Source: Euprymna scolopes (lineage: Eukaryota). Taken from it: a stretch of 64,000 bases of DNA. Positions 12,707-63,310 of this stretch are shown here, piece after piece. The first letter of the stretch is position 1. Every line of letters starts with the position of its first letter. The DNA is taken from assembly GCA_053919585.1 (NCBI GenBank), contig CM132790.1; one strand, written 5' to 3'. The position numbers and the translations under genes were made by a program. Below the pieces are notes generated by a model. The model did no database searches and had not been told where the DNA came from. It saw only the letters and a list, made by a program, of their open reading frames with translations.

Positions 12707-13468
12707 TCAAGGTTCAAATCTGATAAAAAGAATCTTGTTTTAGATGCTGATTTTCAAGGGAACCACTTCCTGCCCTACTCAATAAACCCGATTTTCTTTT
12801 TTCTTCGTTTATTCTTAAAATAAACAAAGTACAAATTATGGGTTCTGCTCCTAGATTTTCATTATCCTGTATTTGGTCAGTGAATGAGATTTTTTTAAAC
12901 TGAGGCAATTTTTCATTTTTATCCCAATCCAGAATACCTCTTTTTTGTATTCACTCTTTTACTGACCATTATCCTCATCTTTATAGTTGTTGTTTCACCA
13001 CCTTTCGGTCAACTCATCCTCTGGAAACAACTACGAAGATGAGGATAACAGTCCACAAAAAAATGAATACAAAAGTTATGAAACCTCATCTCCAAGGATT
13101 AAAAGTAAATAACTAAAAATAATATATATCATTCGGTATGGACCTAACAGTGGAAGACCAGCTAAGAATACAAAATTGGATTTATAACACCGTAAAATCC
13201 AACCTTGATCGTTCTTAGGACCTGTGGTGTAGTTGATAGAGACGTGGATTGGGATAAAAATGAAAAATTGCCTCCGTTTAAAAAAATCTCATTCACTGAC
13301 CAAATACAGGATAGTGAAAATCTAGGAGCAGAACCCATAATTTGTACTTTGTTTATTTTATGAATAAACGAAGAGAAAAGAAAATCGGGTTTATTGAGTA
13401 GGGCAGGAAGTGGTTCCCTTGAAAATCAGCATCTAAAACAAGATTCTTTTTATCAGATTGAACCTTGA
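12707..13468. repeat. Long inverted repeat, ~225-bp arms (12707-12931 / 13245-13468)
   Basis: About 5 differences between the arms by eye; the spacer holds Penelope-like tail fragments. Confidence 0.95.
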
Positions 13469-13519
13469 GTCTCTATGGTTTCAGGTAAGAATTGTCTGAA
13501 GATAGTGGTTTTAATCCTA

Positions 13520-13750
13520 TTCAAGCAGGCCAGAGGATTAGTTGGCTAAAATGTGGTGAAACAGACAACAATGGAAGGCAATAATTATTGGAAATACAGT
13601 TACAGGACTCAGCATTCTTATCCCATCATGGTTAATCACCTGAAGAAGGCAAGAGAATGAGTCGACCGAAACGTGGTTAAACAACAACAATTATGAAGAT
13701 GAAGATAAGTCTTCAAAAGAATGAATACAAAAATTATAGAGCTCAAAGAA
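13520..13750 (+). mobile_element. Penelope-like terminal-repeat fragments with decayed hammerhead motif
   Basis: cacCTGAAGAagg...ccGAAAcg at ~13638-13673 followed by the gaagatga.gataa tail. Confidence 0.55.
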
Positions 13751-14419
13751 TTGAAAATATATATCTCTTTTTTTGCACATAAAACACCGACCTGCTCTCG
13801 TGAGGAGGCAAGTAAATATGGACATTATATGCAGCTGTCTTGTAAGTGGACGACGTTCTGAAACTTGCAAATAGACAAGGCTATAATTCTTAAACATGCA
13901 TCCATTTAGAAAGTTGTAAGAAAAATTTAACAAAAAATAATTAAGCTTAATACTTAGTGTTTTTATTTTCGTTGTGGAAATTCATTTCATCCATTAAAAT
14001 GATGAAGCAGGTTGTCTGTCTGCTGCCATTTTCTTGGCGAAAATGCTGTCTGTAAACATATTTAAAGCCTCTAAGATTATTAAAATATTCTAATTTAATC
14101 ACTTAATTGATTTAACTTTTTTGTCTAATTTTCTCCTTTTTTTTACATGAAGGCAAGGTGGGTTTTTTTTTTTATAATTACTCTTTTTTTGTTTTATATT
14201 TTACATAAAAATTTGAATTAAGCTGGCCTGATTTTCTACTTAAATATCAATGTATCTGAGGAATCGATATTTTATTCTGACTAGTCAATGTAATATTAAT
14301 AAAACATTCTGATTTAATCACATAATTAATTTAACAATTTTATCTTTTTTATTATCTGGATGGACATATTTAAAAATATTTTGTGTATAATTAATCTTAT
14401 TTTTTCTAATTGTTACATC

Positions 14420-14900
14420 ATTTTAATGGTCCAGGAAGTACCTCATTCCTGATAGACTCCACTACTTCTATAAGAGCAAGATACGTCCTAAGATTGAATA
14501 CTGCTGCACATCTGTGGAGGTGCTGCTCACAACACTCTCTTGCCTTGCAAAACTGACTTTACAACTTAGTGTAGAATGATCTCTATCTTGTGGCTGCTTT
14601 CAAACAGAAGATAGATTGGTAACATATCTTTACTCTATCATTATGCTTCTGATAGTTGGTATACTCAGTTCCAATCTTTGACCCTCCCTCCCTGTAAAAC
14701 ATTCACAAAAAAAAACTCTCCTCACTACAACAATAACAAAGAACTTTACTTTTTTCTCTTTCTGTATCAAAAAAAAAACCAAACAAACGAAGCTTTCGTA
14801 GTCTGGAGCTTCTTTCCTTGCACATCTGTGGAATAAGATACAACTACAACAGAGACATCTAATGTAAATCATTTCTGGAGTTATCGTATTCACATCTAAA
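14420..14900 (+). mobile_element. Highly decayed CR1-group LINE family A 3' fragment
   Basis: tataagagcaagatacgtcctaagattgaatactgctgcac encodes YKSKIRPKIEYCC. Confidence 0.65.
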
Positions 14901-61479: not shown

Positions 61480-61803
61480 AAACAAACAAAAACAAACCCC
61501 TTTTCTCCCACATGCCAGGTATCAGGCGAAATTTCCATGAACAGTTTTTTTTTTTCGCATTGGCTTCCCATCTGTGGAATGCATTGGCGTTATATTACTT
61601 TCATGAAGATTACAACATAGTTGTTTTCAAATACAATATCAGCAGATTCCTATAAAAAAAACATCTCCACTGATAACCAAACGTAATTTCGTTAACAAAC
61701 CTCAATCGTGGGGTTCTTCATCTGAACTATTAATAATTCCATCCCATTAACTCTAATCCTCGTGTGATATTTATAAATAGTGACCCATTAGTAAAAAAAA
61801 AAA
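61480..61803 (+). mobile_element. CR1-group LINE family A 3' remnant
   Basis: NFHEQFFF..ASHLWNAL..FHEDYN; poly(A). Confidence 0.7.
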
Positions 61804-62121
61804 TAGTTTCTCTTGTTAGCCCAAAGACGTGACTGACCAAAGTGCCATGATAGCACCTCTAAAAAAAAACGTGTAAAAGAAACAAGATAGTTTTCTTGGA
61901 AATTATATTAATAGGTGTTAAAATTGTATTAATACGTGTTAGGATTATATTAATGTGTGTTGATTTTAACATTAATATAATCTTATTTTAATCATGCATC
62001 GAATTTTTAGGCTAAGGTTTGGTACGAATGATTCTATTTATTTTTAGATTGACAGAAATCGTTTGTTGAATTCCAAGTATTCTACAGATTTTTAATAATT
62101 CAAATTACTAGTTTATTCTTG

Positions 62122-62237
62122 CTGTACGGCATAATCCCATTGGCCCACTTGTTCCTATTCGCTCACCAAAGTTAAATGACGTTCAGTTTTGTCAGTACGA
62201 AATGGGTGACCATTTGGGAATACCAGCTGCTGTATGT
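62122..62237 (+). pseudogene. Degenerate 5S rRNA-derived sequence (pseudogene or SINE3 head)
   Basis: tacggc..aagttaa..agtac..atgggtgacc..gggaatacc..gctgta is colinear with 5S rRNA over ~116 nt. Confidence 0.7.
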
Positions 62238-62589
62238 GCTCTCCGTTTATTTTAGTATTGTTTCCAATCGTACTGAACTTCTTGCCATTGGAATGAGGTA
62301 ATACCGACTTAGGGAAGGCGGGGTTGGGGATTTGGTAAGCCTTGCTTTACAATTACATGCATAGCTACGCTGAGGTTATCCAGTGTTTCTCGAAACTGAA
62401 AAAGTTTCATCGTGATTATTTTCACATAGACTGTAATACAGCACACGATCTGTGCTGATACCGACGAAACCACTTTCTGGAGATAATAGTGATGCGGATT
62501 AAAGCGCGTTTAAATTCAGCCAGACTTTTGTATTCAGTGACAATATTATTTGTGAGTAAAATAGTAACTTGTTTTTCTATTTAAATTAT

Positions 62590-63310
62590 TTAGACTACTT
62601 TGTCTTATTTGGATTAATCGGACTAATGTTCTCATCTTTCGTGTTGTTTGCACAATGTTTCGATCGATATAACCGCCGACCTTCTCCGAGTGTATGTCGC
62701 CATGTTTGATAGAGGAAAGGAAGGAAGATTTAGCTCTACACTTTCGAGGTTTCGTATTTAGGTTAAAGTGAAAATAAATTTACAAAAATTTATAAAGTCA
62801 ATAAAAATATCAAACGAAACACTGAGGGGATATTTTTTTCTGAATAACGAAAAAAGAAAAAGAAAAAAAAGGGGGGGGAGCTTAAAGTTCAACTAGATCA
62901 TTAAAAAATATGTAAGTTCTTAAAACAGTAAAATTTACGTTGTGCAAATAAAACTAAACATGAGAACATTAATTCGAATAATACAATCATTCTTCATCTA
63001 AAAAAAGTCTGAACTTTAATTCGGACGACTATTCTCATCTTAGATGCTATATTTAATTGATCTAACCCTAAACCGATCATTTTTCAGGTGTATATTTCGA
63101 ACTTTGAAAACTATATAATATTTTTAATTGAACCTTACGGTATTAAATTGTTCTTGTTCCGTCATCCATTACCAGATGAAAGCGTTCACCCGCTTGGATT
63201 AAATAAAAGGTAAGTTCGAAATTCCCTGCACGTTCCTGGGATTTTCAAAAACAGTGCGAAAATAACAACCAAGATAAGAAATTTAATTCAAATAATTCAA
63301 ATTATCAATT
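62590..63310. mobile_element. Cluster of decayed Penelope-like terminal repeats in both orientations
   Basis: ggactaatgttctcatctt tail at ~62620 and ~63020, reverse copies at ~62960 and ~63270; degenerate hammerhead at 62651-62692 (-). Confidence 0.55.

What the first reader, a model, noticed from the sequence alone, without database searches (positions are those of the whole stretch)
12940..63310. Dispersed family of hammerhead-bearing Penelope-like terminal repeats of different ages
Seen: related motifs at ~12995-13025(-), 13638-13673(+), 19276-19317(-), 34263-34304(-), 34609-34650(+), 35348-35389(-), 41108-41149(-) and 62651-62692(-). Each is followed by an AAGATGAGRA..AGTCCGAA-like tail, and most lie in inverted pairs. 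Stem II varies compatibly (GGCCG/CGGCC, AGUCG/CGACC, GGUUG/CAGCC, GGUCG/CGAUC). No Penelope ORF is recognisable in the window. Inference: a high-copy non-autonomous, retrozyme-like lineage.
Basis: partly seen in the sequence, partly recalled or inferred. Interest (0 to 1): 0.7.

Follow-up and report, generated by a model that had tools for sequence, protein, structure and literature searches.

The report
Penelope-type hammerhead repeats and SINEs
The motifs are real minimal hammerhead ribozyme motifs sitting near the 3' ends of dead copies of Penelope-like retrotransposons and of short tRNA-headed elements that borrow their machinery; this is an ordinary, already described kind of repeat in a large mollusc genome.

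Summary
All eight reported sites exist and are far beyond chance: a model built on them gives 7 window matches at E below 1e-11, and a pattern search gives 5 matches against 0.19 expected. The motif is the minimal hammerhead of Penelope-like elements (PLEs) described in 2014. It has CUGANGA, one extra base, a 5-bp covarying helix II, and GAAACGU with no helix III. Rfam's hammerhead models do not score it.

The copies belong to at least four families of different age.
- The 34220-34731 palindrome is one insertion with a 13-bp target duplication. It is a head-to-head pair of 5'-truncated ends of a young, protein-coding PLE. Full copies elsewhere in the genome have a 2.7-kb unit and an 868-codon RT frame.
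- The copies at 13465, 19228 and 41070, and the older ones, are about 340-nt elements. They have a tRNA-type head with A and B boxes, a fixed 5' end and the PLE 3' module. They are SINE-like and non-autonomous.

Inverted partners and an optional 36-nt tail are the known PLE insertion scars. No PLE ORF lies in the window.

"Non-autonomous" holds for some families only. "Retrozyme-like" is not supported.

The N gap at 57666-57794 touches no copy. This scan has noted the same elements many times elsewhere in this genome.

The parts
12942..13024 (-). SINE-C 3' fragment (family positions about 205-299). It is truncated inside hammerhead loop II, so only the 3' half of the motif is kept (12996-13024). 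It has no tail.
   Evidence: blastn to natural SINE-C copies at 80%; sequence read.
13026..13124 (+). Inverted head-to-head partner of the previous fragment. It holds the SINE-C 3' end from just after the cleavage site, with the optional tail (CCTCATCTC box).
   Evidence: blastn at 83-85%; alignment.
13465..13761 (+). SINE-C copy (family positions 27-324) lacking the first 26 nt, including the A box. The hammerhead motif is at 13640-13676, with G at position 17.
   Evidence: blastn at 85% over 278 nt; model R1 E 4.6e-14; family alignment.
13517..13564 (+). Degenerate second hammerhead-like module inside SINE-C. Helix II and AAAACGU are kept, but the CUGANGA box is lost.
   Evidence: model R1 at 18.5 bits, E 0.017. 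The module is present in all 20 family copies.
18480..18561 (-). SINE-B body fragment (positions 100-181) without a hammerhead.
   Evidence: blastn at 84%.
19228..19476 (-). SINE-B copy (positions 91-345), 5'-truncated. The hammerhead is at 19279-19314, and the G10.1 position has mutated to A.
   Evidence: blastn at 84% over 262 nt; R1 E 2.9e-17; more than 5000 first-look genome candidates at 83-88%.
19480..19584 (+). Inverted partner: SINE-B 3' end from just after the hammerhead, with tail.
34207..34219 (.). Left copy of the 13-bp target-site duplication. Its right copy is at 34732-34744, and 12 of 13 bases are identical.
   Evidence: script; sequence.
34220..34461 (-). Left arm: the last 240 nt or so of the young autonomous PLE (family A), 5'-truncated and without tail. 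The hammerhead is at 34266-34301.
   Evidence: inverted repeat I1 at 99%; R1 E 1.5e-14; 96-98% identity to genome copies.
34462..34731 (+). Right arm: the same PLE 3' end plus the optional tail of about 36 nt (34696-34731). The hammerhead is at 34612-34647, and cleavage is predicted after 34647.
   Evidence: The tail continues into the next unit in tandem copies.
35315..35404 (-). Old B-like 3' fragment. The hammerhead is decayed (C3 to U, helix II broken).
   Evidence: blastn at 71%; R1 E 2.8e-12.
41070..41362 (-). Old, nearly full-length B-like SINE with a recognisable B box and a decayed A box. The hammerhead is at 41112-41146, with G8 mutated to A.
   Evidence: blastn at 66% over 316 nt; sequence; R1 E 9.3e-15.
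50413..50545 (-). Family D, left arm of a head-to-head pair. The hammerhead is at 50491-50519, and GAAA has mutated to GUAA.
   Evidence: inverted repeat I4 at 85%; sequence.
50567..50720 (+). Family D, right arm. This is an AT-rich minimal hammerhead at 50594-50622 with CUGAAGA, an extra U, a 5-bp helix II with a 3-nt loop, GAAAUAUU, and a 6-bp helix I (AAAAUU/AAUUUU).
   Evidence: read by eye. Model R1 gives only 13 bits, E 0.57. The family has about 1800 first-look candidates at 86-91%, several of them also inverted pairs.
57666..57794 (.). Assembly gap (N). It is not part of any copy.
62599..62845 (-). Old B-like copy. The hammerhead is at 62654-62690 and its first core box has decayed to CUCGGAGA.
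   Evidence: R1 E 7e-15.
62937..63003 (+). Opposite-strand partner fragment that starts at ACGUU|GUG and carries a tail.
63010..63095 (-). A further small fragment with an AAGATGAG..GTCCGA box and a weak hammerhead-like match.
   Evidence: sequence; R1 E 0.084.

Best explanation
The window holds about a dozen dead insertions made by the reverse transcriptase/endonuclease of Penelope-like elements (PLEs). They belong to at least four families.

Every family ends in the same 3' module of about 95 nt. In order, the module holds:
- a minimal type-I hammerhead (CUGANGA, one extra base, a 5-bp helix II, and GAAACGU with no helix III);
- a short A/C-rich stretch;
- the box AAGAUGAG..AGUCCGA;
- the 3' end;
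- in some copies, a further 'tail' of about 36 nt that carries CUCAUCU.

Families:
- Family A (34220-34731) is the autonomous element itself. The copy here is one insertion event with a target-site duplication, in which two 5'-truncated cDNAs were joined head to head.
- Families B and C (19228, 13465, 41070, 62599 and others) are about 340 nt long. They have a tRNA-type Pol III head placed in front of the PLE module, and they ride on PLE enzymes as SINEs do on LINEs. In family B the whole SINE sequence is also the last 350 nt of the 3' UTR of a coding PLE.

Shown here: the motif, the family structure, the link to a coding PLE, the tail, the inverted partners and one target duplication.

Inferred from published PLE work:
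- Reverse transcription starts at two internal sites that bracket the tail.
- The endonuclease cuts both strands, which yields the inverted partners.
- The hammerhead acts, if at all, as a dimer on multimeric transcripts.

The hammerhead is probably not needed for copying. The very successful family C carries G at position 17, which the NUH rule says cannot be cleaved.
For: Motif:
- It is read directly at all sites.
- Model R1 gives 7 matches at E below 1e-11.
- Helix II covaries.
- Among family founders only N7 varies in the CUGANGA box, taking A, C or U.
- All four extra traits listed for PLE min-HHRs in PMC4209133 are present: consensus families with compensatory changes, a base between positions 9 and 10.1, the G10.1-C11.1 pair, and palindromic positions 15.2-16.2.

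Link to a coding PLE:
- Family A copies share a fixed 3' end and have variable 5' ends of 234 to more than 1160 nt.
- L024:4341-8160 is a partial tandem in which 4341-5433 equals 7068-8160, with a 2727-nt unit.
- An 868-codon open frame matches RVT_1 at E 1e-10. Its C-terminus reads as a GIY..YxG..R..E pattern with paired cysteines.
- Its nearest Atlas clusters are animal RT proteins of about 830 aa, some carrying GIY-YIG, at score 0.97-0.98.
- Family B's 350-nt element follows a PLE EN-coding region at the same junction in three separate loci, L038, L054 and L055.

SINE nature:
- Families B and C have fixed 5' ends that begin with TGGCGCAGTGG (A box). They have GGTTCAATCC or GGTTTCAATCC (B box) about 50-65 nt downstream.
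- The DNA upstream of the 5' end is unrelated between copies.

PLE insertion scars:
- The optional tail is present in about half of the family C copies, and several family B copies carry it too. It is present on one arm only of the window pairs.
- Inverted 5'-truncated partners are common.
- Both features are described for PLEs in PMC8557442 and PMC11167929.
- The A pair is flanked by a 13-bp target duplication.

Other:
- G17 is found in 18 of 20 family C copies.
- Contigs of oligo-dT and polyA RNA libraries from two studies cover most of the family A ORF.
Against: - No Rfam hammerhead model scores any copy, even at E up to 10.
- Helix I is only 3-4 bp in families A to C.
- No self-cleavage was shown. 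No pile-up of RNA ends was seen at the predicted sites L024:5384 and 8111. However, those libraries (assembled contigs and single-cell 3' reads) could hardly show one.
- Pfam does not detect GIY-YIG in the C-terminus.
- ARAGORN and the Rfam tRNA model do not recognise the SINE heads. 'tRNA-derived' therefore rests on the A and B boxes and on the fixed 5' end.
- Target duplications could not be found for the older copies.
- The RNA libraries may contain DNA, so expression is not proven.
Confidence: 0.85

Rival explanations
1. The short copies are not SINEs. On this view they are ordinary 5'-truncated copies of coding PLEs that happen to stop at a hotspot where a tRNA-derived piece lies in the 3' UTR. 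The window would then hold truncated autonomous elements only.
For: - In L038, L054 and L055 the whole family B 'SINE' is simply the end of a coding PLE's 3' UTR.
- tRNA detectors do not recognise the heads.
Against: - About 14 of 19 sampled family B copies begin within a few bases of the same position, exactly at the start of the A-box-bearing head.
- Family A, which lacks such a head, shows scattered truncation points.
- A structured tRNA-like block in the RNA should stop reverse transcriptase at its 3' side, not its 5' side.
- None of the 19 fetched family C loci besides the window's own copy (L057-L075) has PLE coding sequence next to the element.
Confidence: 0.1
2. The repeats would be a retrozyme-like lineage: tandem units transcribed, self-cleaved by the hammerhead, circularised, and copied from circular RNA.
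For: - A hammerhead core is present in every family.
- One locus outside the window (L005:1925-2777) holds a direct tandem of a hammerhead-bearing unit of about 390 nt.
- A 2026 preprint derives animal retrozymes from PLE pLTRs.
- Two earlier scan notes report tandem units elsewhere in this genome. I did not check them.
Against: - The window has no direct tandem of these units. Copies are single or inverted.
- The motif is the minimal PLE form, without helix III or loop-loop contacts. It is not the canonical type-I hammerhead of animal retrozymes (PMC7229834).
- Copies have fixed linear 5' and 3' ends plus the PLE tail.
- Family C has G17.
- No back-joined or monomer-length RNA signal appeared.
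Confidence: 0.04
3. The motif is not an RNA element at all. On this view it is conserved because it lies in the N-terminal coding part of the PLE frame, or it is a chance resemblance to the hammerhead core.
For: In L024 the long open frame runs through the motif, and an ATG lies 87 nt upstream of it. tblastn of that stretch finds the other families at 35-57% identity.
Against: - The non-coding families B, C and D keep the motif.
- Helix II changes are compensatory at the RNA level (C-G to U-A, G-C to A-U).
- Variation in the first box is limited to the free position N7.
- Chance expectation is 0.19 matches against 5 seen.
- Overlap of ORF start and hammerhead is already known for the anole PLE (PMC11167929).
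Confidence: 0.02

Closest known systems
Minimal hammerhead motifs (min-HHR) in the pLTRs of Penelope-like elements (Cervera and de la Pena 2014, PMC4209133)
   Same: - The core boxes, the unpaired base between A9 and G10.1, and the G10.1-C11.1 pair.
- No helix III, with a palindromic ACGU.
- A short helix I.
- Thousands of mostly solitary copies grouped in consensus families with compensatory changes.
- Pairs on opposite strands 100-700 bp apart.
- Location in the terminal repeat of a coding PLE.
   Different: Helix II is 5 bp with a 10-nt loop here, against 7-8 bp in the schistosome families. One large family (C) has G at position 17. Activity was not tested.
PLE insertion anatomy: 5' truncation, partial tandems (pLTR), an adjacent inverted truncated copy, and an optional 30-40-bp tail (Craig et al. 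2021, PMC8557442; anole Poseidon in vitro study, PMC11167929)
   Same: All four features are seen. The partial tandem is L024:4341-5433 = 7068-8160. Inverted partners are seen in the window and in other loci. A tail of about 36 nt is present on one arm only.
   Different: Here the same scars are also carried by non-coding elements of about 340 nt. The tail box CUCAUCU is complementary to the conserved AGAUGAG box. I did not find this complementarity described in the papers I read.
Sm-alpha / Sj-alpha of schistosomes: SINE-like, tRNA-related retroposons that carry a hammerhead (as summarised in PMC2770079)
   Same: A short, very abundant non-coding element that joins a tRNA-like Pol III head to a hammerhead.
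   Different: By my recollection, Sm-alpha has a canonical, active type-I hammerhead. The elements here have the minimal PLE form, and they share their whole 3' part with a coding PLE of the same genome.
Animal non-LTR retrozymes (PMC7229834; 2026 preprint 10.64898/2026.07.22.740005)
   Same: Non-autonomous, hammerhead-bearing, a few hundred nt long, and thought to depend on or derive from PLEs.
   Different: Retrozymes are direct tandem arrays with canonical type-I hammerheads, expressed as circular RNA. The window copies are dispersed or inverted, have fixed linear ends and a Pol III-type head, and gave no circle signal.

Membership tests
PLE minimal hammerhead (min-HHR) | Core boxes CUGANGA and GAAA in type-I order | tested here: met
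   Intact in the family-typical sequences of A, B, C, D and E. Only N7 varies, taking A, C or U. Old single copies carry point mutations, as expected for dead copies.
PLE minimal hammerhead (min-HHR) | One unpaired base between A9 and G10.1, and a G10.1-C11.1 pair | tested here: met
   The extra base is A in families A, B, C and E, and U in D and in the copy at 35348. The G-C pair is present in 7 of 9 aligned copies.
PLE minimal hammerhead (min-HHR) | No helix III or loop 3, with palindromic positions 15.1-16.1 | tested here: met
   GAAACGU in families A, B, C and E (ACGU) and GAAAUAU in D (AUAU). Old copies read ACAU after CpG decay.
PLE minimal hammerhead (min-HHR) | Helix II supported by compensatory changes between families | tested here: met
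   3 of 5 pairs have changes on both sides, and 84% of cells are paired. For the whole structure, 6 of 500 shuffles reach the covariation score, and slid controls reach 50% paired at most. With only 9 related sequences the support is moderate.
PLE minimal hammerhead (min-HHR) | A cleavable site: position 17 is not G | tested here: inconclusive
   Position 17 is U in families A, B, D and E. It is G in 18 of 20 family C copies.
PLE minimal hammerhead (min-HHR) | Self-cleavage as a dimer | not testable with these tools
   No excess of RNA ends was seen at L024:5384 or 8111, but the libraries were unsuited to show one.
Rfam hammerhead families (types I, II, III, HH9, HH10) | Score at or above the family's gathering threshold | tested here: not met
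   No hammerhead match at the gathering threshold over the whole window. None at E up to 10 on 34100-35500, and none at E up to 1 on seven loci.
Penelope-like element, endonuclease-positive | Reverse transcriptase domain in a single long ORF | tested here: met
   L024:5213-7816 is open for 868 codons. RVT_1 matches at E 1.1e-10 over residues 405-606.
Penelope-like element, endonuclease-positive | C-terminal GIY-YIG endonuclease | tested here: inconclusive
   Pfam gives no GIY-YIG match even at E up to 10. By eye, the C-terminus has ..IY..C.C...YKGET.R......EH. The nearest Atlas clusters include GIY-YIG-bearing RT proteins.
Penelope-like element, endonuclease-positive | Partial tandem forming pLTRs, 5' truncation, an inverted partner and an optional 30-40-bp tail | tested here: met
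tRNA-derived SINE | Pol III A and B boxes in a tRNA-related head | tested here: inconclusive
   The A box TGGCGCAGTGG fits TRGCNNAGTGG exactly. The B box GGTTCAATCC or GGTTTCAATCC is close to consensus. ARAGORN and the Rfam tRNA model find nothing.
tRNA-derived SINE | Short, non-coding, and with a fixed 5' end shared by unrelated insertions | tested here: met
   Family B is about 350 nt and family C about 335-365 nt. Upstream flanks are unrelated between copies.
tRNA-derived SINE | 3' part shared with an autonomous partner of the same genome | tested here: met
   Family B is 85-95% identical to the 3' end of the coding PLE in L038, L054 and L055. Family C shares only the module of about 60-95 nt with families A and B, and no coding partner was found for it.
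Animal non-LTR retrozyme | Direct tandem repeats of 170-400 nt, each with a canonical type-I hammerhead | tested here: not met
   The window has no direct tandem of these units. The motif lacks helix III.
Animal non-LTR retrozyme | Circular RNA of monomer length | tested here: inconclusive
   No back-joint at the cleavage site appeared in four RNA runs. Only a family A locus was laid, and the libraries were oligo-dT based.

The most novel reading that the evidence does not exclude
In this genome the SINEs may not merely share a tail with their partner. The complete SINE, Pol III head included, sits inside the 3' UTR (pLTR) of a coding Penelope-like element. A PLE pLTR could therefore double as a SINE master gene.

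Two further points would follow:
- The hammerhead core would be kept for recognition by the PLE protein rather than for cleavage, because family C spread to thousands of copies with an uncleavable G17.
- The conserved AGAUGAG and CUCAUCU boxes would pair into a stem that brackets the first reverse-transcription start site.
Probability: 0.3. Interest if true: 0.5.

Novelty: new member of a known kind. Interest (0 to 1): 0.3.

Why it matters
It mainly matters for annotation. Thousands of these copies would be missed by Rfam and probably left unclassified by repeat libraries. Palindromic pairs such as 34220-34731 mimic microRNA precursors: Rfam miRNA models reach E 3e-7 on it.

Biologically the data add three things:
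- A clear SINE/PLE partnership in a mollusc.
- A natural experiment on whether hammerhead cleavage is needed for PLE-type copying, comparing families with U17 against a family with G17.
- A candidate conserved stem around the reverse-transcription start site.

None of this changes what is known about the kind of element.

Tried and rejected
- Rfam at gathering and permissive thresholds gave no hammerhead and no tRNA. On the palindrome it gave only spurious miRNA-like hits.
- ARAGORN on 19 SINE-C loci found nothing.
- Pfam on the PLE C-terminus and N-terminus found no GIY-YIG and nothing else credible.
- I considered Ceph-SINEs and rejected them. Their conserved domain derives from RTE LINEs (PMC5786205), and its quoted signature strings are not in families B or C.
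- I tested whether the 215-nt inverted repeat 12717-12931 / 13245-13459 is part of the element. It is not. As a whole it occurs only at these two places in the genome. It remains an unexplained local inverted duplication.
- A search for target duplications around the older copies found nothing above chance.
- RNA runs were laid on a family A tandem locus to look for ends at the cleavage site or for back-joints. There was no signal, but the libraries were unsuitable.
- Model R1, built without family D, does not pick up family D convincingly (E 0.57). Its hammerhead assignment rests on reading the sequence.

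
Full report
**The observation**

- A loose pattern for its 5' half gives 5 matches where shuffled sequence gives 0.19.
- A covariance model built from nine natural copies (A3, R1) scans the whole window without filters. It returns seven full motifs at E 3e-17 to 3e-12, including 34257-34309(-), which was not in the training set. Nothing else scores better than E 0.017.
- The site at 12996-13024(-) is only the 3' half of the motif, because that copy is truncated.
- The AAGATGAG..AGTCYGA box follows every copy.
- Four loci are head-to-head inverted pairs.

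The single assembly gap is at 57666-57794. It lies 6.9 kb and 4.8 kb from the nearest copies. No claim here depends on continuity across it, and I did not try to fill it.

**What the motif is**

Rfam does not recognise it at any threshold, but it fits the "minimal hammerhead" of Penelope-like elements (PLEs) point for point (PMC4209133):
- CUGANGA;
- one unpaired base, A here (U in one family);
- helix II closed by G10.1-C11.1;
- GAAA followed directly by C-G-U, so that A15.1-C-G-U16.1 is the palindrome ACGU, with no helix III or loop;
- a short helix I (CAC/GUG, 3-4 bp).

Across the typical sequences of the families, the first box varies only at the free position N7, which is A, C or U. In helix II, 84% of cells are paired and three of five pairs show changes on both sides. 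Slid controls reach at most 50% paired for the whole structure, and 6 of 500 shuffles reach the observed covariation score. With nine related sequences this is moderate support, not proof.

**Family A: the young palindrome**

The arms 34218-34451 and 34462-34695 are 99% complementary. They are 96-98% identical to more than a thousand first-look candidates across the 5.9-Gb genome.
- Those copies share one 3' end and have scattered 5' ends, from 234 to more than 1160 nt. This is the pattern of 5' truncation.
- Walking upstream reaches full elements.
- In L024, bases 4341-5433 repeat 7068-8160 at 99.9%. This is the partial tandem that makes a PLE "pLTR", and the unit is 2727 nt.
- An 868-codon open frame (L024:5213-7816) has an RVT_1 match at E 1e-10.
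- Its C-terminus reads ..IY..C.C...YKGET.R......EH, which looks like the PLE form of GIY-YIG. Pfam does not confirm this.
- The nearest protein-atlas clusters are animal RT proteins of about 830 aa, some annotated with GIY-YIG.
- The hammerhead lies in both terminal repeats of the tandem (L024 cleavage sites at 5384 and 8111).

The window copy is therefore the last 240 nt or so of an autonomous PLE, inserted as two truncated copies head to head. A 13-bp target duplication (34207-34219 and 34732-34744, 12 of 13 identical) shows that the pair is one event. The right arm alone carries about 36 further bases (34696-34731). In tandem copies these bases are the start of the next unit. This is the optional PLE "tail" (PMC8557442; PMC11167929).

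**Families B and C: SINE-like elements**

The copies at 19228-19476 and 13465-13761 match thousands of first-look candidates at 81-88%. Alignments of 19-20 fetched loci each give these results:
- The elements are about 335-365 nt long.
- They have a common 5' end, and the upstream flanks are unrelated between copies.
- The head contains TGGCGCAGTGG, an exact fit to the Pol III A-box consensus. It also contains GGTTCAATCC or GGTTTCAATCC, a near-consensus B box.
- ARAGORN and the Rfam tRNA model do not call these heads. "tRNA-derived" therefore rests on the boxes and the fixed 5' end. From memory the family C head resembles tRNA-Arg(ACG), but I did not test this.
- The 3' ends fall at two positions about 30-36 nt apart, short and tailed, in roughly equal numbers. 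This is the PLE signature.
- Several copies have an inverted truncated partner abutting their 5' end.

Family B has a demonstrable partner. In L037/L038, L054 and L055 the same 350 nt follow, at the same junction, a region encoding a PLE RT/EN that is 60-71% identical to family A's protein. No coding neighbour was seen for family C.

Family C contains a second, decayed copy of the module upstream of the intact one (13517-13564 in the window, E 0.017). Position 17 is G in 18 of 20 copies. By the established NUH rule this should block cleavage.

The older window copies are diverged relatives of family B:
- 41070-41362 is nearly full length and still shows a B box.
- 62599-62845 is accompanied by fragments at 62937-63003 and 63010-63095.
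- 35315-35404 is a short 3' fragment.

**Family D**

The pair 50413-50545 / 50567-50720 is unrelated in sequence and AT-rich. This pair was flagged by another note of this scan. It reads as a tidy minimal hammerhead: CUGAAGA, an extra U, a 5-bp helix II with a 3-nt loop, GAAAUAUU and a 6-bp helix I. The family has about 1800 first-look candidates at 86-91%, several of them again inverted pairs. Model R1 gives it only 13 bits, so this assignment is by eye.

**How it most likely works**

The following steps are inferred by analogy with published PLE work, mainly the anole Poseidon element (PMC11167929):
- A PLE protein binds the 3' module of its own RNA or of a SINE RNA.
- It nicks both DNA strands and starts reverse transcription at either of two internal sites. 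This gives copies with or without the tail.
- Frequent use of both nicks, or template switching, gives the head-to-head truncated partners.

The two most conserved stretches downstream of the hammerhead are AGAUGAG and CUCAUCU. They are complementary in families A, B and C, and RNAalifold predicts just that 7-bp stem. Both arms are invariant, so there is no covariation, and this remains a hypothesis.

The hammerhead could process multimeric transcripts as a dimer. However, the success of the G17 family agrees with the published finding that cleavage is dispensable in vitro. Together they suggest that the motif is kept for another reason, such as protein recognition, or simply hitch-hikes.

On RNA evidence, contigs from oligo-dT and polyA libraries of two studies cover most of the family A ORF. 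This is compatible with transcription. DNA carry-over cannot be excluded, and no ends or back-joints mark the cleavage site.

**Comparison and verdict**

Everything structural here has been described before:
- PLE min-HHRs, including opposite-strand pairs 100-700 bp apart (PMC4209133);
- PLE insertion anatomy (PMC8557442);
- tRNA-related SINE-like elements with hammerheads in schistosomes (PMC2770079);
- the idea that hammerhead-bearing non-autonomous elements derive from PLE pLTRs (2026 preprint).

In six full-text searches I did not find a paper describing PLE-dependent tRNA-headed SINEs in cephalopods or other molluscs. The families are therefore probably new members of a known kind.

The single "non-autonomous, retrozyme-like lineage" is not. 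One family is autonomous, others are SINE-like, and retrozyme features (direct tandems, canonical type-I hammerhead, circles) are absent in the window.

The scan's own notebook holds 66 notes on the same theme in this genome. I reached the SINE and PLE-tail readings before seeing them, and they agree.

Noticed in passing
window 12717-12931 and 13245-13459: A 215-nt inverted duplication, 98% identical. As a whole it occurs only at these two places in the genome. Its left arm abuts the 3' end of the (-) SINE-C fragment, and its right arm abuts the 5' end of the (+) SINE-C copy. It may be a rearrangement tied to the insertions, but it is unexplained.
   Followed up: partly
L005:1925-2309, 2387-2777 and 2778-2832: A direct tandem of a hammerhead-bearing unit of about 390 nt, 98% identical, with a shorter loop II than the window families. 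A short inverted partner lies next to it. This is a PLE-style partial tandem of a short element, and the only tandem I saw.
   Followed up: partly
window 34416-34497: The centre of the young PLE palindrome scores as several microRNA precursor families in Rfam (MIR6201 at E 3e-7, below gathering). This is an annotation trap, not a miRNA.
   Followed up: yes
families A, B and C; e.g. window 34667-34673 with 34712-34718, and alignment A5: The conserved box AGAUGAG, about 20 nt after the predicted cleavage site, is complementary to CUCAUCU in the optional tail. RNAalifold predicts this 7-bp stem. It brackets the short 3' end. There is no covariation, because both arms are invariant.
   Followed up: partly
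window 23930-26040: About 2 kb of (TC)n-rich satellite with a 16-18-nt period (CTCTCTCTCCGCATGT-like), GC 0.50 and GC skew -0.55. It creates long spurious ORFs on both strands.
   Followed up: no
window 35090-35300: A 27-28-nt minisatellite (TTTTACGTAGCACTT[CT]GCTGACT, about 8 copies) directly beside the old fragment 35315-35404.
   Followed up: no
L042:2761-2877: A 5S rRNA match at 82 bits, above gathering, about 900 nt from a SINE-B copy. It could be a gene, a pseudogene or a 5S-derived repeat.
   Followed up: no
window 63312-63386 and 63561-63635: A 75-nt inverted repeat, 88% identical, just beyond the finding's end. It has no hammerhead core and is unrelated to the families described here.
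   Followed up: no
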